A DNA stretch of 63,930 bases, filler included, from Dugesia japonica (Eukaryota): NCBI GenBank assembly GCA_001938525.1. It is 6 parts of 6 records of this genome, joined end to end, with 100 filler letters (N's around TTAATTAATTAA, not from the genome) between each part and the next. Parts side by side here need not be neighbours in the genome. Positions count along the whole stretch, not along the records: positions 1 to 10,302 come from MQRL01497085.1; 5 more parts are not named here. One strand, given 5' to 3'. This document shows, in pieces, positions 1 through 10,302 of the stretch. The first letter of the stretch is position 1; each line of letters opens with the position of its first letter. Made by a program: the position numbers and the translations under genes. The notes below the pieces were generated by a model, which made no database searches, was not told the DNA's origin, and worked only from the letters and a program-made list of their open reading frames with translations.

Positions 1-210
1 TTTTAAATCCCAATTGATGATCAGCTAACACAGAATGCTCAACGCTAACAAATTTAACCATTAATTTTGTATCAAGTAATACATAGAAAGGTTTGTTAAT
101 TGCAGATTCCAAACACATTTTAACAGATGCTCTTTGCAATTGAATGTGTACATTAACATCAGGACTAAGATATTTCGGTTGATCCATAAAATCAAGTTGT
201 ATTGAACTAA
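1..210 (-). pseudogene. Polinton/Maverick major capsid protein (double jelly-roll, PY-like), internal fragment; element A
   Basis: Manual translation SSIQLDFMDQPKYLSPDVNVHIQLQRASVKMCLES...DTKLMVKFVSVEHSVLADHQLGFK fits the Polinton MCP pattern (D.F.Q.K.L...V...L.R; .L.V..V....V...H) and parallels the MCP text at 49790-49900. Runs off the window edge. Confidence 0.7.
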
Positions 211-214
211 ATTG

Positions 215-880
215 AACGTATGACCCAAATAATTATGACTATGAATAAGTTTCGGGAAAACATTTATCCATGTTCTATTACCAACATTTACAAATTACTT
301 TTAATAGCATCTCTGAATTTACAATTAAATCTCTACATATACAGTTTTTATTGAGAAAATACACTATAATGATTTATTTATAGATGATTAATAAGTTTTT
401 TTCACTTTAAAATTATACAATTCCTTACCCAAATCCGCTTGTAAATTATCTGAGTGTCCATCTTTGAACATTGTCTTGATTGCTGGCTCCATATCACAAC
501 CAGATTTCGATTTATCTGGAATATCTCGTGCATATCTGCTGAATACATTGATACATGTTAGAATATACTTGTAACCTTTATTAAATTTTGAATATAGAAA
601 CACTTCCATCAAATCGATTTGCCATAAATCGTCAATACTATATGTTTTATACGCTCTTGTTGGACATTTTTTCAACATCAGTTTGTTCAAACTGTATGCC
701 AGCTAACCTGATAACCATTTTTTCGGCTTTCTTTTCAACTTTTGAGCTACTTTCATTAATTTTCTAGACCTCATAAACTTGCTGAGGTTATTGGATCGGT
801 CCATATTGTCTTCAGTTTTGCTCCCACTACAAACATGAAAATGTTAAGTAAAAAATAGGTAATAATTGTAATCCACCCAT
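215..880 (-). pseudogene. Polinton-type retroviral-like (rve, c-type) integrase, decayed and 3'-truncated; element A
   Basis: AYSLNK..KK.PTR, WQIDLMEV, NKGYKYILTCINVFSRYA, LQADLGKELYN, GNRTW, PKLIHSHN; clearly similar to the integrase at 48067-48981. Contains stops and frameshifts. Confidence 0.9.
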
Positions 881-3800
881 TGCTTATTTGAAATGAGTTA
901 TTTCTAGTGTTGCTAATGCAATCAATAATACTACTGCTATAAAAAACCCCTTTGTTCATTCATTACTCGATTTATCGATTTATTATATCATTTTATTTTT
1001 ACTTGTATCATCCATTCAGATCTATCATCNTATTTATTCTCGTCCTGCCTATTAAAATAGATGATAATCGAATTCTATATTTCTATATCTTTACTGAATC
1101 TTGCAAATAATGCTTCTAATATGTTTTATCTTTCGTTTTGATATCGGAAAAAAGCAAACTGTATTTTTATTTTGTAATCACAACTAGTGTCTGAAAAAGT
1201 AATAATTTATAATGAAAACAATAAATAAAATTACTCTAAAATCATAATTCCTGATTGAAATGGAAATCTTTAATTTTTCCAAGTTACACAGTAATTGATT
1301 ATAAATTTTTCTTTTGTAAGTAAACTTTGTTGAATTTTTGTTTTTAACTTTAGGAAAACCGTTGCTTATATACTTGCTGTGATGCATACGTACACATCCT
1401 TTGCATGTTTCTATTGGTTGATATTTTTTTTAATTGATATGATTGGTTGAATTTAAGACCTATGCAACACGATTGCAACCGAATATCAAGTGACTGATGA
1501 TTTTAGATTGCCGAAAGCATTGAATTACATATATAACTGGCTTTTGGAACATGATCGCATTAACCATGCAACACGTGTGTAACACATATACACACAAAGA
1601 CTGACCAAACGAAGACTAAACATCAAGACTGCCTGAAAATCATCTATTAACACTCTTGCTTCTCTTCCACCAAGATTTTTGAAAATTTATACAAAGACAT
1701 ACACAACTCAAAAAAATCTAAACTATNNNNNNNNNNNNNNNNNNNNNNNNNNNNNNNNNNNNNNNNNNNNNNNNNNNNNNNNNNNNNNNNNNNNNNNNCT
1801 ATACTACTTACAAATCAAATTTCTTTATCCTTCAAAACATCTTAAAACCCGTAAAATCTCACAGGTCAAAAATCAGGAAAAAATTAAAACAACTCTTGAA
1901 ATTCATAAAAATTCATCTATTATTTATCATATAAACACAAAAGATACATTTTCCTTATAAAATCAACCTTTCTCTTTCTTATAAAAAAAGTTTTAATTCG
2001 ATAAAAAAGGATTTCCGCCAAAAAAGTATTACTTATTAATCTTTAAACTTTAACTACCAAAAAATAAATCGATAATCCTCCAACTCGACCCAAAACGAGT
2101 TTCATCATCTGCGTCAACATCCAACCTTTCCAACAACGTCAAATTCATCCAAATCCATTAGCAACTCACAAAAGCAAACCGATTTTAAGGAAAAGTGCGC
2201 AATAACTGATCAGATTTTCCGGTGCCCTAACATTCATTATAGCCTAACGAAGTACTTTATGCCAAAAATGCTTTAGACAATGTATAGACAGAATTTTGGT
2301 CCCACTACAAAAATACTACTCTCATCTCAAAATAGTAAAAGCACACACATACTCCTTTTGAGTCAACTTTCTTTCTTTACACTATATCTTTACACACATA
2401 CACACACTGCACGTACATAAACGATATGCTAACATACATACATACATGCCAATACCATCCATCACCAATATCGCAATACTTTTTAAAAAAAATTGAAAAA
2501 TAAANAAATTCGAATAAATTAAAACAATATTTAAAATTATAAAAAATAACCCCATTAATACATCAAAAAAATTAAAACTTTTCATCATACCAAAAACTTT
2601 GTTCCGATCAAAAATCTTAAGATTCAAAATCCACGATAACCCAAATCAAAAATTTAAGAACAGTGTTATGTTTTTTCGCTAGTGGATGGGGGTGTTTCAG
2701 TGCGCTACTATCTACCATGTAGCAATAAGACTATTTGGCAAACCACACTGAGTAAAGAAATTACGAAGTTTCTTAGTAATTTGTCATGACTACAGGAAGT
2801 TTATAGAAAACTATGCAAGAAAATCAATGATTTTAGAACAGTTATGTAGTCGACGAAGCCACAAGAAGTTAAAATGGAAAAGTGAAATAAAGGATACTTC
2901 TGAGGGTCTGAAGAAGCGTGATATAATATCCCTTATATTCGCCTTGTAATATGCGCCAACATTGCGAAGAATTTGTGGAGTCAAATACAGGAAATAGTTT
3001 GTAGCTGTGAAATTTGTCAGAAGATCAAAGTAGAAATTAAAAATGTTTAATATTGAGTCAAAACTTTCAAATAAAAACAATTCTCTGTAAAAGAATTGTT
3101 TTTATAGTGTAAATTTTTATAAATTTGTAATTAAAAATTGATTTAGAATTGCCTGAAAGACCTCAATTGTCATTTATGCATAAATTAACTATTTTATCAT
3201 GTGAGTTTCGAAAACTGTTTTATATTTTGACGTAATAATGCAAATTAGGATAAAGTTTATATTTATGGAAAGTAAAGAAATAATGGATTGAATTAATATT
3301 TGCTATCGAGTAATATTAGTTTCTTCGTCAGTAAATAGCTGTAAGGGAAAAGTATGAAAAAATGATTAATATTATCGCTATTATTGTTATTATTATTAAT
3401 AAATATTATTGATTTTTTTCTGTCTAAATAAAGCCAAATAAAAATTTGCATAATGAAATATTTCACTCAGTCGATTTAAACAAAAATTTATTTTTAATTT
3501 TATTTGCTGAATAAATCAGAGTTAATTAAAATATGCTTCAAAAAACTTTTCAACAATAATATTGATTTAATTGCCTAAGTCAAAGTATTTATGAAATATT
3601 TCAGATAATTTTACAACGAAAATATTGAATTACAATATAATGTTATTCAAAATGTTATTTTCAATTGAAAATACGGTTAATAGAAAAATACAATTTATTG
3701 ATTAAAAAATATTCAGTTAATAATTTCAATAAAAATTAATCCCAATGAAAATTACTTGATGAATTATTAGGATATCAAATATCAAGTAAGACATCTTCCA

Positions 3801-4329
3801 CAATTTTTATTAATGCAATGTCATTTAATACATCTCTGGTTGCCTCACGAATTCATATCTTATTTCCACATTACTCACAAAATAATTATTATTTATTGTC
3901 AACAAATTTAAATTTTGTTACAATAAAATATTTAATACATTCGAATTCGACTAATTTTGAATTAATTGTTGGATATTGATAAATTTGTCTGTATAATACT
4001 ATGAAACCACGTGATCAATTTTATTTTTTATAAGTAAACATGTGGAGAATTTTAATGGTATCTTCAAACACGTGCCGAATTGTTTTGCACCCACACGAGC
4101 AAACGCTAAACCGTACGCCATAGTTATTCATTTAAATGATATTGATTTCTTTAAATAACAAAATTTTTATTCAATTACAAATTTATTTCAATATTATTTA
4201 CAAAAATAATTAATATTTTTTATGAACACATACATACACTCGAATTTCTCCATTCGATATAAGATGGTATCTAGAAATTTTTACCAATAACTCAAAATAA
4301 ATATATATCAATTAACTCTTACCGAAATT

Positions 4330-4593
4330 CTATTGATTTTCTATTTGCTGTTCACATTGAGAAATCGATTTCGATGAAAGTAATAGAATTAATTCCAAGT
4401 CTTGTATATAATTAATAACATGTTGTAACAATTCGATTTGGTTGACTTTTTTATTTCTTGGAATAGTTGGAACTAATTTTTTTAATTCACAAAAACACTT
4501 TTTCATTTCGATTGATCTAATTGAACGAGTTAATGAAAATCGTTTTTGTAGTTTGAAAAAATGATTTTTTTTCTTTAAAAAATGTATTGTCAT
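4330..4593 (-). CDS. Id / extramacrochaetae-like helix-loop-helix protein (about 87 aa)
   Basis: [39 protein letters not shown] is the Id/emc HLH signature (LKxLVPxIPxxxKVSxxEILQHVIDYIxDL). First ATG at 4593 (the ORF caller extends to a TTG at 4659). CCAAT-like boxes lie upstream at about 4657 and 4690. Confidence 0.88.
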
Positions 4594-5014
4594 TGAAGAA
4601 CAGAAAACTTTATGCAAATAGTAAAATTTAACATCAGATTTATGAAAAATAAACACCAATTACGTGGTTAGAAAATTAAAGAAATTTGATTGGTCAAAAT
4701 TCCTAATACTGACTGATTTTTATGAATTGGTGACCAAAGTAAATTAGCATAATAACTGGACTTAATTTCAGAATTTTATTTCGTTTTTGAGTTCTATTTG
4801 TATTTTAATGAATACTTTAAATCAAAGTTATCGAATTTTATTTAATTTTATTTGAAAATGTTTGTTTTCTTTTTATTTTAGTTATTCATTGCATTAAAAC
4901 CTTATAAAACTTGATTTTTAAAAAATATTATAAGTAGAGTAGTATTCACTTATGCCTTTCTAGTACATTTTTCTAATTTCATAAAAAAATAAATTTATAA
5001 AAATATGTAAAAAA

Positions 5015-5240
5015 AATATGTAAAAAGTAGATATCACACAAAATATGTGAAATATTCGGTGTGAAATGTGAAATATTCGGGTGTGAAATGAGACATGTGA
5101 AATATTCGGTGTGACATGTGAAATATTCGAAGAAGACAAAATATGTGAAATGTAAAAAGTAGATATCACACAAGAAATGTGACATGTGAAATATTTGGGT
5201 GTGAAATGTGACATATTCGGAGAAGACAAAATATGTGAAT
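5015..5240. repeat. Sub-terminal tandem repeat array of ATGTGAAATATTCGG / ACATGTGA units, with two higher-order copies about 133 bp apart
   Basis: ATGTAAAAAGTAGATATCACACAA recurs at about 5017 and 5150; AGAAGACAAAATATGTGAA also occurs twice; many ATGTGAAATATT units. Confidence 0.9.
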
Positions 5241-5309
5241 TTAAGAGGAATAAATATAAAAATAAAAAAGAGGAATAAAACATCTGTGATTAAATTATTC
5301 CTTTAGAAA

Positions 5310-8300
5310 ATGAGCGCTATAATAAGTTGTGAAAATTGTAATAAGGTGTTTAAGAATTTAGCAGGTAAAATGGGACATATTAGTTCCAGAACTTGTTACA
5401 GAGTAAATGCAGCATTTAAATGTAATAAATGTAATAAAACATTTAATTCAGAAAATAGTTTACAATTACATATAAATTCAACACGTTGTGGTAATTCGGA
5501 AATTTTGCCATTATTTTGTAAAATCTGTAATAAAAAATTCCAAAGGCAAAATCACGCAAGAGCACATTTCAATTCTGAGAAACATAAAAAAATGGCTCAT
5601 GAAGTTGTATTTAGAGAATTACCACAAGAAGAAGCAATTAATTATGATGCTGAAATTAAGGATTTATTTAGAATATATAAAGATTATGAAATTGTTTATT
5701 TTAAAGATAGTAAAGTGGAAATGAAATATAATGTGGAAGGATTATATGACATTCCTATTAGAAATGTTAATGCATTTAAAATTGATGTTAAAGAAATTGT
5801 TAGAAAGTATTTTAGACACGGAAAAAAGATTGTTATAGGCATGACTGTAAAATGCAGATATATAAAAGAAAGAAATAATGAATATGTTGAAAAAGATTTT
5901 ACATCCTTTTCTAAACTAAAAAGAATTTCAATTGAAAGTGAAATACCAAATGTTGTTAATGAAACATTTAACGAATTAGAAAGATATATTGAAGATAGAG
6001 ATAGAGAAGGAAGTGGATGGTCAATGTCGCACATTATAGATTATAAATTAGATCTTTCTAAATATCAATCATTAGCAGGNNNNNNATATTGTAAATTACC
6101 ATTTACAAAACCAGGAGTTAATATAGAAAATAAAGATAACAAATGTTTTCTATATTCAATATTAGCACATAAATATTTACATGATAATCCTACAAGAGTA
6201 AGTAATTACATTCCACATTTAACAGATTTAAAATATAATGATTTGACATTTCCAATGAATATTGACGATATTAATAAATTTGAGAAATTAAATAATTATC
6301 AAATAAATAGGTTTGGTGTCAATGCAAATAAAAAACTTGAACCATTACACATTACACATCACATAAGAAATCCATCACCTGAAGAAAATAAATGTAATTT
6401 GTTAGTATACAAAGATCATTATGTTTTATGTAGAGATTTAACTGTATTTTTCGCAACTAATGGAAATAGAAATTATCCATGCATTAGATGTATGAATTGT
6501 TATTCATCTGAAGAAGTTTTAAATAAACATCAAGATGCATGTATTAGGCACAAACCAAACAACATTGTATTTGAACATAATGATTATTATTTATTTAATA
6601 AATTTTACCAGAAAAATAAAATACCATTTATTCTTATTGGAGATTTCGAAGCATATACAAATTCATATAAAAAACAAAATGCTTTATCTTTAGGTGTTTA
6701 TTTAAAATCAGATTATCAAGAATTAATGGAAAGTAAATATTATGAATTCTCAGGTAAAAATATTTATGATGAATTCTTTCAATTTTTAGAAGACACCAAT
6801 AATAAATTACAAGATATAAAAGATAATAAATTAATAGAAACATTTGAAGGTGAGATACGCGAATTAACATCTGACACAAAATGTTATTATTGTAACAAAT
6901 TTATATCTAACACTGCAGTTATAGATCATAACTATTTCAATGGAGAATTTCGAGGATATTCATGTAATGATTGTAAGATAAATGATAGAAGTGTAAAGAA
7001 TTTATTTATTCCATTTTACTTTCATAACGCATCAGGTTATGATAACCATTTATTTTTTAGGGAATTATTGACAAAGTTTCCAAGTAAAGTAAAAAAGATA
7101 ATTCCTCACTCATCAGATAATTATATTGCATTTCAATTTAGAAATATCAGATTTCTTGATTCACAAGATTACTTCCTTTTACATCTGTTGAAGTAATGGG
7201 AAAATTATTAACACAATCAGGTAATTACCCAATATTAACATCATTTAATTTAAAACCAAAGAAAGCATTATTTCCATACAAATATGTAAAAGGTAACACT
7301 ATAACAGAAGTTGAAACATTATTAAAATCTAATAGAATACCAACTAAAAAAGATTTCTTTAACACACTAAATCAAAAAGAAATATCTAACGATGAACATG
7401 ATGAATTTTTAATAGATTATTTAGATTTCAAAAATATGTGGCAATACATGTTACACTATATGAAGTTAGATGTTTTAATTCTAACTGATTTCTTAGAAAA
7501 CTTTAGAGATTCAAGTTTGAATAACATTTTAAAATAAGATCCATGTTATTCATATTCTGCACCTGGATATGCATGGGAAACTGGAATGTTAAATGCAAAT
7601 GTAAAACTTAAATATGCAAAACCAGAAACCTATGATATTTTCTTAACAGCTGANGANGGAATTAGAGGTGGATATTCTGGTGTTTTAGGTGAACGTCAAG
7701 TATTTAGTTATAATAAAAATAAAGAACCATTTACAAGACAAATGAATAAAGCATAATTTGAAGATTTAATAAAAATGATGAATACACACGATTTGATTCC
7801 AGATGAATATCTTGATGATTTAATGGAAGATACATTTATAAAATATTTAGATGAAAATTCTTTATATGCATCATGTATGACTAAACCATTACCAACAGGT
7901 GAAATGCGTGAGTGTGAAATGTTAATATATGAAACAGCAACTGACACATTAAATTTTATTTATGAAGTTGATCTTGAATATCCACCTGAAATACATGATA
8001 AAACTAAATATTTTAGATTAGCACCTGACAGAATAAATATTACAGAAGACATGTTAAACAATTACCAAAAATCATTTAATAAGAAAATAACAAATAAAAA
8101 TATTAAATTAACACTTAATCAATTTGACAAGAAAAATTATGTTGTACTTGGAAGTACATTAGATTTATATTTAAAATTAGGTATGAAACTAAAAACAATT
8201 CACAAGAAAATTAAAATGGAAACATCTACATGGTTTAAAAATCATGTTCACAAATTAATAACTTTAAGAAAAGAATCTAAAAGAAATAATGATGTGTTTG

Positions 8301-10023
8301 GTGATTACATTTACAAATTAATGTTAAATGCTTTCTATGGAAAAACTTTAGAAAATATTAGAAATAGATGCAACATAGAAATTGTAGATAATGACAGAGA
8401 TTATCAAAGGTTTGCAAGTAAAATAACTTTCAAGTCAAGTAAAATCTTTACAATAAATGATTCAAATGAAGCTCATATTGCGGCAATGCATATGGAAAAA
8501 GGAAAACTAAAATATAACAAATTTCCATATATATGTTTTACCATTTTAGAAAATGCAAAACAAGTAATGTATGATTTTGTATATAATCAAATGCAACCTT
8601 TAATTAGAGAAAGTAATTATAAAATACATTACAGTGATGGTGTAACATCTGACACTCCAATAATTTTAAGGAGAGATAATAAAGTTGAAATAAAAAAGAT
8701 TTCAGAAATAGATCAAAATTATAAGAAAAATAAATATGATAAAAAATATTATTCTTATCCTGAAGATTATGAAATATGGACAAAAAGTAATTAGTCTAAA
8801 TTAAATAAAGTAATTAAGCATAGAACTAATAAATAAATTTATAGAGTTAGAACTAAAATGGGAATTGTTGATGTAACACAAGATCATTCACTGTTAAATG
8901 ATAATGGTGAACAAATAAAACCAATAGATGTAACATGTGAAACTAAATTATTACATAATAAAATATTTAAAGTAAATAAGGAAATAAACATTGATAAAAT
9001 TTTATCAGACATTTATGATAACGAACCTAATAATTCACATTTAAAGAAAGCATTTATAGATGGATTCTTAATTAGAAGTGGAGCAGCAACAATTTATAAT
9101 AATAATAAATATTATTATTCATTTTTTAATAAAGATTTATCTTTATTAAATAAAATAAAAAGATTTCACAAATCACCAATGATATTTGATTCAATAAGAC
9201 CACAAAATGCTCATAAACTTAGTTCACTAAATCCAAAACCTCATGCAGAATATTATTTTGAAAATTATTATAATAAATTTGTAAGAACTAAAAGAATTCC
9301 AGATCACATGTTAAATGCAACATTTAACATTAGATATTGGTTCTTTGTAGGATTTTATGCATCAAAAAATAATAATAAAAAAAAAATTAGTTTTACACAA
9401 GAAGGAAAAGAATGTTTTTCACAGTTGTATTATTTAGCAACATCTTTAGGAATTAATTTAGTTGTTACAGAAAGAAAAGATACAGACTATTTCACTGCAA
9501 CACAAGTAAAATCAAGTATTACAACTAACATGCAAAGTGTAACATTTTTAAGAGAAGGTATTGAAGATGTTTATGATATTGAAACTGAAGATGGAACATT
9601 TAACTGTGGATTTCCATTAATAATGAAAAATAGTGATTAATATTTGTAGAGATAAAACATAGAGATAATTTAGAGAGATTACAAACTTTACTAGGAAATG
9701 ATTTATTTCAGATGAAAGACGAATTACCTAATTCTGAAATAAATCAAGCTAATTTTATAAAAGCAAAAAGTTATGCTTATAGTTATAATGATAGCGCAGC
9801 ATTTGATTCTAGAAATAAAGGTGTCAAGAAAAATAATAAATTAATGATGAAAAATTTTGATTCAGTTTTAAAAGATCCAAGGAAAATAATTTATGGAACT
9901 AATTTTTCATTAAAATCTGAAGGTCATGAAATAGAAATATTAGAACAAAAGAAAATAGCATTAATGGCATATGATGATAAGAGAATTATAGAAGATAATG
10001 CAACAACAACATGGCCACATTGA
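5310..10023 (+). pseudogene. Protein-primed family B DNA polymerase (Polinton group-2 type) with N-terminal zinc fingers, OTU-like region, EndoVII-type insert and an intein
   Basis: GSGW; NKDNKCFLYSILA; ExoI GDFEA; ExoII FHNASGYDNH; RFLDS; FPYKY; ExoIII HYMKLDVLIL; GIRGG; motif A YLDENSLYASCM; motif B KLMLNAFYGK; split motif C; KSYAY; KGV; DDKR. Five predicted ORFs join through 2 frameshifts (about 7163 and 9638) and 4 in-frame stops (7535, about 7754, 8792, about 8834). Confidence 0.95.
8639..9631 (+). mobile_element. Intein (Hint splicing domain plus degenerate LAGLIDADG homing endonuclease) at the PolB motif C site
   Basis: Block A GVTSDTPIILR directly after YSD; block B VDVTQDHSLL (TxxH); endonuclease blocks AFIDGFLIRSG, KRIPDHMLN, FFVGFYASK, LYYLATSLG; block F VYDIETEDGTF; block G LIMKN followed by +1 Ser. 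993 nt = 331 codons in one frame, with two point-mutation stops. Confidence 0.93.
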
Positions 10024-10113
10024 AATCAATATTATTGTTTTACATGTGACATGTGGCATTTTAGATTAGACAAAATAAATAAAACATTAACATGTAATTT
10101 TTTATTATAAGAA

Positions 10114-10302
10114 ATGACGAGCGAAGCGAAACCAATGAGTGTAACGAATGCAGGGAATCCAACAGAAGAAGAATTAAAGAAAATAGTAAATTCTAAAACA
10201 TGTAAATCTGTAAAGATCAACGGTAAAAATTATATTAGTAAAAAAGTAAAAGATGAACTTAAAAAGAAATCACATGAAGGTGGATTTGCATTTTTAGCTG
10301 CA
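10114..10302 (+). CDS. Small basic ORF with HEGGFAFLAA motif (Polinton pX/core-like virion protein candidate), truncated by spacer
   Basis: Lys-rich stretch followed by GGF and hydrophobic residues, like KHEGSGFFWAAL in 47388-47864; resembles an adenain-type protease cleavage site. Confidence 0.5.

What the first reader, a model, noticed from the sequence alone, without database searches (positions are those of the whole stretch)
8639..9631. Full-length intein inside the active-site motif of a Polinton protein-primed polymerase in an apparently animal genome
Seen: pPolB motif C is split as IHYSD | 331 codons | SD. Restoring one missing base at about 9638 gives SDSIFVEIKH..., in frame with the rest of the polymerase (MKDE, KSY, KGV, DDKR). 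The insert has intein blocks A, B (TQDH), F (VYDIET) and G (KN, +1 Ser) and LAGLIDADG blocks. Established: the YxD|TDS site is a known intein site in RNA-primed PolBs of archaea and large DNA viruses, and true inteins are essentially unreported from metazoan host genes. Inference: this is an intein-bearing Polinton/adintovirus lineage, a parasite nested within a parasite and a route for inteins into animal genomes. I do not know of a described case in a Polinton pPolB, but cannot check the literature.
Basis: partly seen in the sequence, partly recalled or inferred. Interest (0 to 1): 0.95.

Follow-up and report, generated by a model that had tools for sequence, protein, structure and literature searches.

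The report
Dead intein inside a Polinton polymerase
A decayed self-splicing protein element (intein) of the type known from giant-virus DNA polymerases sits in the active-site motif of a broken Polinton protein-primed polymerase gene, next to an animal Id gene. This would be a rare trace of an intein in an animal genome, but this copy is a fossil, not a working element.

Summary
Bases 8639-9631 (331 codons) interrupt motif C of a protein-primed family-B polymerase. 73 of 73 intein-less relatives are contiguous at that point.

The insert is a Hint + LAGLIDADG intein of the 'pol-c' allele class (YxD|TDS site, as in Mimivirus PolB). It has 441 homologues, the best at E = 4e-30. It scores above the Pfam Hom_end threshold, and a structure model matches solved homing-endonuclease inteins.

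The host gene is a pPolB2-class Polinton polymerase with an HNH insertion, related to the C. briggsae pPolB2. A fragment of a Polinton-type integrase and an Id-family HLH exon lie nearby. No assembly gap separates the Id exon from the polymerase.

This copy is dead. The polymerase gene carries 2 frameshifts and 4 in-frame stops, 2 of the stops inside the intein. The intein lacks its position-1 nucleophile and the acidic residues of both endonuclease motifs.

Most of the closest intein relatives sit in RNA-primed, probably giant-virus, PolBs. At least four other database fragments carry the same intein lineage in protein-primed PolBs.

No paper in the searched library describes a Hint intein in a Polinton pPolB. 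I rate it a new member of a known kind, in a new host gene and a new kind of genome, of moderate to high interest.

The parts
5310..10023 (+). [quoted passage not shown] It is broken by 2 frameshifts and 4 in-frame stops, 2 in the exteins and 2 in the intein.
   Evidence: PF03175 on two pieces (4e-5 and 1.9e-13). The pieces are collinear with intein-less P0001 and with C. briggsae CBG25359, and with IMG/VR loci L007-L010.
8639..9631 (+). Intein of the pol-c allele class, 331 codons (Hint splicing domain plus LAGLIDADG homing endonuclease), inserted between the D and the T/S of motif C. It is decayed.
9035..9535 (+). LAGLIDADG homing-endonuclease domain of the intein (approximate bounds). The acidic catalytic residues of both motifs are not conserved in this copy.
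   Evidence: Pfam Hom_end and LAGLIDADG_3. PI-PkoII by sequence at E = 0.014. AlphaFold model pLDDT 78; Foldseek matches TliVMA intein at 2.7e-8, plus I-DmoI, PI-SceI and PI-PfuI. Alignment A1.
5415..5588 (+). C2H2/JAZ-type zinc fingers at the N-terminus of the polymerase.
   Evidence: PF12171 at 1.9e-10 and PF12874 at 1.1e-8. Relative P0005 also has an N-terminal C2H2 finger.
6870..6977 (+). HNH (Endonuclease_7-like) insertion typical of HNH-bearing pPolB2.
   Evidence: The window hit is weak (E = 0.013). The hits are significant at the equivalent place in P0001 (2e-8) and P0002 (9e-9). The feature is described for nematode and oomycete pPolB2 in PMC10748475.
5045..5240 (.). Array of roughly 21-nt direct repeats about 70 nt upstream of the polymerase start codon. 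One more copy lies at 10045-10065. It may be terminal or regulatory repeats of the element.
   Evidence: Its function was not tested.
4330..4659 (-). Neighbour: an Id-family helix-loop-helix exon (host animal gene).
   Evidence: PF00010 at 8e-12. Human ID1, ID2 and ID3 chains at 1.8e-12 to 9e-8. The closest named relative is from the trematode Dicrocoelium dendriticum.
388..729 (-). Fragment of a Polinton-type (rve) integrase, about 90 codons.
   Evidence: Weak PF00665 hit. It is 43% identical (E = 2e-16) to the rve + chromodomain integrase encoded just downstream of pPolB2 in L014, L019 and L073.

Best explanation
The insert is the remnant of a bifunctional intein (a Hint splicing domain enclosing a LAGLIDADG homing endonuclease) of the 'pol-c' allele class. 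It lies between the Asp and the Thr/Ser of motif C (YxD|TDS) of a pPolB2-class protein-primed DNA polymerase. That polymerase belongs to a Polinton/Maverick remnant integrated beside an Id-family gene of an animal.

How an intact copy would work (inferred from the family): the intein is translated in frame with the polymerase. It then excises itself by an acyl shift at intein residue 1, transesterification onto the +1 Ser/Thr, and cyclisation of the terminal Asn. This re-forms the catalytic motif. Its endonuclease cuts intein-less polymerase alleles at the same site, and repair copies the intein in (homing).

Origin (inferred): the lineage came from inteins at the same site of RNA-primed, probably giant-virus, PolBs and colonised pPolBs once or a few times.

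Shown here: the homology, the exact site, the absence of the insert from relatives, and the decay of this copy.

This copy can neither make a polymerase nor splice nor home. It is a molecular fossil.
For: Intein identity:
- 441 homologues, best 4.3e-30.
- The C-junction (K/H)N|TDS occurs in nearly all of 125 hits. The N-junction YGD|SVTGDTP occurs in 16 of the 18 hits to the intein's N-terminal piece.
- This matches the Mimivirus YGD|TDS pol-c site with first Ser, last Asn and +1 Thr (PMC549080).
- The window scores above the Pfam Hom_end cut-off. Homologues hit Intein_splicing.
- The structure model matches solved homing-endonuclease inteins.

Host gene:
- PF03175.
- Collinear with P0001, P0002 (C. 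briggsae) and P0005 and with L007-L010.
- HNH insertion.
- Relatives encode an rve + chromodomain integrase next door, and a fragment of it is in the window.

Insertion:
- 0 of 84 pPolB2 loci carry the intein, and the junction is contiguous in 73 of 73.

Origin:
- At least 129 of the 150 best hits have RNA-primed PolB exteins.
- The pPolB-hosted inteins (window, P0020, P0060, P0130) form an exclusive group in a neighbour-joining tree, bootstrap 62/100.
- P0059, the closest intein (44-64% identity), sits in another PF03175 pPolB class.

Decay:
- Break counts and lost catalytic residues.

Animal context:
-.
Against: - The window contains no capsid, ATPase or protease gene and only one possible end of the element, so the Polinton assignment rests on two genes.
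- The integrase fragment lies on the far side of the Id exon and on the other strand, which is not the arrangement seen in relatives.
- Support for a single origin of pPolB-hosted inteins is moderate (62%, 136 columns, neighbour-joining only).
- 'Giant virus' for the RNA-primed hosts is inferred from one 228-kb contig's gene content and from the literature, not from taxonomy labels.
- I could not check physical linkage to the Id exon against reads.
- The host species is unknown.
Confidence: 0.85

Rival explanations
1. Assembly chimera or contaminant. The polymerase plus intein belongs to a protist-associated Polinton-like virus or other non-animal DNA that was joined to an animal contig.
For: The window contains N runs. 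The closest relatives all come from environmental metagenomes. The source genome's own ORFs are not in the protein collections.
Against: No N lies between the Id exon and the polymerase start. G+C is uniformly about 21-28% from the Id region through the element. The gene is heavily decayed, as expected of an old genomic resident rather than a replicating contaminant. A second Polinton-type gene fragment lies on the other side of the Id exon.
Confidence: 0.1
2. The insert is not a splicing element. It is a retained endonuclease-domain insertion, like the HNH and VSR domains already described in pPolB2.
For: Polinton pPolB2s do carry nuclease-domain insertions (PMC10748475; PMC11161782). This copy lacks the position-1 nucleophile.
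Against: Hint blocks A, B, F and G are all recognisable, with the terminal Asn and the +1 Ser kept. Homologues hit Pfam Intein_splicing. The insertion splits the catalytic motif itself, which a polymerase could not tolerate without excision. The HNH domain is a separate feature elsewhere in the same gene.
Confidence: 0.03
3. The gene is still functional. The in-frame TAA/TAG codons would be read as sense under a variant code, and the frame changes would be assembly errors or programmed shifts.
For: All four in-frame stops are TAA or TAG, none TGA.
Against: In DNA of 25% G+C this pattern is expected by chance about one time in five (my own estimate, about 0.68^4, from the frame counts). Two frame changes are present as well. 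Catalytic residues of the intein and endonuclease are lost, and there is a deletion after the junction relative to relatives. Animals with Id genes use the standard nuclear code (general knowledge).
Confidence: 0.02
4. The exteins are an endogenised giant-virus (RNA-primed) PolB, the usual home of pol-c inteins.
For: The closest full-length relatives of the intein sit in RNA-primed PolBs.
Against: No PF00136 or PF03104 hit on any extein piece, whereas PF03175 hits two pieces. No extein piece matches any RNA-primed host protein among the 150 intein hits. The exteins are collinear with pPolB2 relatives.
Confidence: 0.01

Closest known systems
pol-c allele inteins of RNA-primed family-B polymerases (Mimivirus PolB intein; archaeal PolB position-III inteins; PMC549080)
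   Same: Same insertion point inside the catalytic motif (YGD|TDS). Same architecture (Hint plus LAGLIDADG endonuclease, about 330-350 residues). Same terminal Asn, +1 hydroxyl residue and TxxH block. Direct sequence homology to hundreds of such inteins.
   Different: The host protein is a protein-primed PolB (PF03175) of a Polinton, not an RNA-primed PolB. The penultimate residue is Lys rather than His, a trait shared with the closest RNA-primed-hosted relatives. This copy is a pseudogene in an animal genome.
HNH and VSR nuclease-domain insertions in Polinton pPolB2 (Jeong et al. 2023, PMC10748475), which Krupovic et al. 2024 (PMC11161782) read as traces of intein invasions
   Same: Selfish endonuclease-related insertions inside Polinton pPolB2. 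The window's gene also has the HNH insertion.
   Different: Those insertions are nuclease domains with no recognisable Hint splicing domain, at other positions. Here a complete Hint + LAGLIDADG intein sits in motif C.
Solved homing-endonuclease inteins (TliVMA and PhoVMA inteins, PI-PkoII, PI-SceI, PI-PfuI)
   Same: Same fold for the endonuclease core and adjoining Hint strands (Foldseek E = 2.7e-8 to 1e-5). Weak sequence match to PI-PkoII.
   Different: Only 12-17% identity. Different host proteins and insertion sites. The window copy lacks the catalytic acidic residues.
Nuclear inteins of fungi and protists (PRP8, VMA1, RNA polymerase subunits; PMC5784728)
   Same: Inteins residing in eukaryotic nuclear DNA.
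   Different: Those sit in cellular housekeeping genes and are active. This one sits in a mobile-element gene, belongs to a viral/archaeal allele class, and is dead. The review states that inteins are absent from metazoan genomes.

Membership tests
Intein (Hint + LAGLIDADG), pol-c allele | In-frame insertion at a conserved host-protein site that is contiguous in homologues | tested here: met
   The junction is contiguous in 73 of 73 pPolB2 loci and in P0001. The insert is 993 nt, a multiple of 3.
Intein (Hint + LAGLIDADG), pol-c allele | Insertion between D and T of YxD|TDS (motif C) | tested here: met
   The window has ...YSD | insert | SD.... Relatives have YGD|...|TDS. The site is defined in PMC549080.
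Intein (Hint + LAGLIDADG), pol-c allele | N-terminal splicing block with a nucleophile at intein residue 1 | tested here: not met
   The block is recognisable, but the nucleophile carried by 16 of the 18 hits to the intein's N-terminal piece is absent from this copy.
Intein (Hint + LAGLIDADG), pol-c allele | Block B TxxH | tested here: met
   TQDH aligns with T.DH of relatives.
Intein (Hint + LAGLIDADG), pol-c allele | C-terminal Asn followed by a Ser/Thr/Cys at +1 | tested here: met
   The window has KN followed by S. The closest relatives have KN|T.
Intein (Hint + LAGLIDADG), pol-c allele | LAGLIDADG endonuclease domain with acidic catalytic residues | tested here: inconclusive
   Fold and family are met. 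The acidic residues of both motifs are not conserved in this copy.
Intein (Hint + LAGLIDADG), pol-c allele | Uninterrupted reading frame and splicing activity | tested here: not met
   Two in-frame stops lie inside the intein and a frameshift lies near its C-terminal junction. Activity itself is not testable with these tools.
Polinton/Maverick, pPolB2 class | Protein-primed PolB (PF03175) related to pPolB2, with the HNH insertion | tested here: met
   The class is described in PMC10748475.
Polinton/Maverick, pPolB2 class | Linked retrovirus-like (rve) integrase | tested here: inconclusive
   Only a fragment of about 90 codons is present, about 4.6 kb away on the other strand and beyond the Id exon. 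Relatives have the integrase directly downstream.
Polinton/Maverick, pPolB2 class | Capsid proteins, packaging ATPase, maturation protease; terminal inverted repeats and target-site duplication | not testable with these tools
   The piece ends 280 nt after the polymerase, and only one side of the element is in the window.
Adintovirus | Specific relationship of the polymerase to adintovirus polymerases | not tested
   No named hit of that kind came back from any search.
RNA-primed PolB of giant viruses (endogenised) | PF00136/PF03104 domains in the exteins | tested here: not met

The most novel reading that the evidence does not exclude
A lineage of Polintons whose protein-primed polymerase carried a working pol-c intein was active in an animal germ line. 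The intein lineage crossed from giant-virus RNA-primed PolBs to Polinton pPolBs by exploiting the shared YxDTDS-coding site, presumably in cells where both replicated. It has since spread among at least two pPolB classes. Polintons would then be the first documented vehicle bringing true inteins into metazoan genomes, and intact intein-bearing copies may still exist in this or related animals.
Probability: 0.35. Interest if true: 0.8.

Novelty: new member of a known kind. Interest (0 to 1): 0.58.

Why it matters
Reviews state that inteins are absent from metazoan genomes (PMC5784728). The idea that nuclease insertions in Polinton polymerases are scars of intein invasions has been only a suggestion (PMC11161782).

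This locus, together with the four database fragments found here, gives direct sequence evidence for three points:
- Complete Hint + LAGLIDADG inteins do colonise Polinton protein-primed polymerases.
- They use the same catalytic-motif site as in giant-virus and archaeal PolBs.
- Such an element reached an animal genome.

It also links the intein pools of giant viruses and Polinton-like elements. That link bears on how these two groups of eukaryotic DNA viruses meet and exchange parasites. The practical weight is limited, because this copy is a fossil.

Tried and rejected
- Exact look-up of a window ORF in public assemblies found nothing, so the source genome could not be identified.
- The contig with the closest Id homologue (L006) is from another species: 66% nucleotide identity in the coding part only. 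It gave no empty-site comparison.
- Searches of IMG/VR with P0060, P0059 and P0020 found no close relatives.
- The extein piece had no match among PDB sequences.
- A profile comparison of the P0059 C-extein with pPolB2 C-exteins was not significant. It was classified instead through its own relatives.
- Kapitonov & Jurka 2006 and two Krupovic & Koonin reviews are not held. My vague memory that an early Polinton paper mentions an intein therefore stays unverified.
- Rejected readings: an RNA-primed PolB origin for the exteins and a variant genetic code.
- I did not read the gene through its breaks, join frames, or build any consensus.

Full report
WHAT IS IN THE WINDOW

The piece (1-10302) is AT-rich, with 20-33% G+C throughout. 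On the + strand, 5310-10023 is one gene split into six open pieces.

Pfam finds the following on those pieces:
- C2H2/JAZ zinc fingers at the N-terminus.
- A weak Endonuclease_7 (HNH) match.
- DNA_pol_B_2 (PF03175, the protein-primed 'organellar and viral' PolB family) on two pieces (4e-5 and 1.9e-13).

On the - strand, 4330-4659 encodes an Id-family helix-loop-helix. PF00010 scores 8e-12, and human ID1, ID2 and ID3 chains score 1.8e-12 to 9e-8. The closest named relative is from a trematode. No N lies between this exon and the polymerase start.

THE OBSERVATION

The N-extein ends ...IHYSD at 8638. The next 331 codons (8639-9631) end in ...KN, followed by SD. The remainder of the polymerase continues in another frame and carries the KDE, K.Y, KG.KK and DDKR motifs shared with relatives.

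Intein-less relatives are contiguous at exactly this point:
- P0001, from a marine metagenome, reads straight through ...SDTDS....
- In C. briggsae CBG25359, the window's N-extein aligns up to residue 695, and the C-extein of the related intein-bearing fragment P0060 aligns from residue 696.
- Four IMG/VR loci are contiguous there.
- Of 84 fetched pPolB2 loci, none holds the insert. In all 73 that hold both exteins, the extrapolated gap is about 0 nt.

THE INSERT IS AN INTEIN OF THE POL-C ALLELE CLASS

The 260-residue piece finds 441 proteins at E<=1e-3 among 1.84 billion representatives, the best at 4.3e-30.

Of 125 hits that reach the C-terminal end, nearly all read ...(K/H)N|TDS.... Of the 18 hits to the N-terminal intein piece, 16 read ...YGD|SVTGDTP....

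This is the site and chemistry described for the Mimivirus PolB intein: YGD|TDS, first Ser, last Asn, +1 Thr, the 'pol-c allele' shared with archaeal PolB inteins (PMC549080).

Further support:
- Homologues hit Pfam Intein_splicing, Hom_end and LAGLIDADG_3.
- An AlphaFold model of the piece, built with an 18-sequence alignment, has pLDDT 78 and pTM 0.73.
- Its best structural matches are homing-endonuclease inteins (TliVMA 2.7e-8, PI-PkoII, PhoVMA, PI-SceI, PI-PfuI) and I-DmoI.
- The penultimate Lys, where many inteins have His, is shared with the closest relatives. It is a family trait, not decay.

THE HOST GENE IS A POLINTON-TYPE PROTEIN-PRIMED POLYMERASE

The extein pieces are collinear with P0001, P0002 (C. 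briggsae CBG25359) and P0005. None of them matches any RNA-primed host protein among the 150 intein hits.

P0001 and P0002 carry a significant Endonuclease_7/HNH domain where the window has its weak one. This matches the HNH-bearing pPolB2 class described for nematode and oomycete Polintons (PMC10748475). That CBG25359 is that paper's C. briggsae pPolB2 is my inference.

In relatives, an rve + chromodomain integrase is encoded directly downstream of the polymerase. A fragment of about 90 codons from the same integrase family lies in the window at 388-729 on the - strand, beyond the Id exon.

Capsid, ATPase and protease genes and the element's ends cannot be assessed. The piece stops 280 nt after the polymerase.

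STATE OF THIS COPY

The polymerase gene has 2 frameshifts and 4 in-frame stops, 2 in the exteins and 2 in the intein. It also has a deletion just after the junction relative to relatives.

The intein lacks the residue-1 nucleophile that 16 of the 18 hits to the N-terminal piece carry. The acidic residues of both LAGLIDADG motifs are not conserved.

The four stops are all TAA or TAG. That is not significant in DNA this AT-rich, and the frame changes rule out a simple variant-code reading.

The copy is therefore a fossil. It can neither make a polymerase, nor splice, nor home.

WHERE THE INTEIN CAME FROM

At least 129 of the 150 best hits have RNA-primed family-B exteins with PF00136/PF03104.

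One of them lies on a 228-kb contig of densely packed, giant-virus-like genes. DNA polymerases of Phycodnaviridae, Iridoviridae and Mimiviridae are the commonest intein hosts among eukaryotic viruses (PMC5784728). I infer 'giant virus' for most hits from these two points; it is not labelled.

A few hits are different:
- P0060 (ENA ERZ27248209) and P0020 (NCBI GCA_044232415.1) have C-exteins that start at the +1 residue and align with pPolB2 (1e-28 and 9e-18 to CBG25359).
- P0130 groups with them by intein sequence.
- P0059 (ENA ERZ27241786) carries the closest intein (44-64% identity). It sits in a different PF03175 pPolB class, whose other members are intein-less.

In a neighbour-joining tree of the C-terminal 130 or so intein residues of 118 sequences, the window, P0020, P0060 and P0130 form an exclusive group with bootstrap 62/100.

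The simplest reading is one or a few transfers from RNA-primed to protein-primed PolBs at the shared catalytic-motif site, followed by spread within Polinton-like elements. Among pPolB2 genes the allele is rare: 0 of 84 sampled loci.

LITERATURE

Five full-text searches combined 'intein' with Polinton, Maverick, self-synthesizing, protein-primed or pPolB. None found a paper describing a Hint intein in a Polinton polymerase.

The nearest statement is that nuclease domains inserted in Polinton pPolBs 'result from intein invasions' (PMC11161782). It cites the HNH and VSR insertions of PMC10748475, and that paper does not mention inteins.

The founding Polinton papers are not held. I have an unverified memory that one of them may mention an intein, so I cannot claim priority.

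VERDICT

The reading needs three corrections:
- The copy is dead.
- The lineage is not unique to this locus.
- 'Adintovirus' is untested.

This is a new member of a known intein allele class, in a new host gene family and a new kind of genome. Interest is moderate to high. It would rise if intact copies are found in animals.
Noticed in passing
window 5415-5588: The polymerase starts with C2H2/JAZ-type zinc fingers (PF12171 at 1.9e-10). Relative P0005 also has an N-terminal C2H2 finger. The pPolB2 paper I read (PMC10748475) has no text match for zinc fingers.
   Followed up: partly
window 5045-5240 and 10045-10065: An array of roughly 21-nt direct repeats lies about 70 nt upstream of the polymerase start. 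One further copy lies just after its stop codon. These could be terminal or regulatory repeats of the element. Unexplained.
   Followed up: partly
window 388-729 (- strand): A fragment of a Polinton-type rve integrase lies on the far side of the Id exon and on the opposite strand to the polymerase. Either there are two element remnants or the region was rearranged, so the Id gene is flanked by Polinton debris.
   Followed up: partly
window 10114-10302 (+ strand): An open reading frame begins 90 nt after the polymerase and is cut by the edge of the piece. It has no significant family hit and no match in the fetched loci.
   Followed up: partly
window 5310-10023: All four in-frame stops of the broken gene are TAA or TAG, none TGA. 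This is not significant at this base composition.
   Followed up: yes
L014 2528-3520; also L019 and L073: In metagenomic pPolB2 relatives, the gene directly downstream of the polymerase is an rve integrase with a C-terminal chromodomain. Many of these contigs come from a few JGI samples (for example the Ga0126343 series).
   Followed up: partly
L003 (ENA ERZ27241786) 2-1314: The closest relative of the window's intein is itself split between two frames on its contig. It sits in a pPolB class different from pPolB2.
   Followed up: partly
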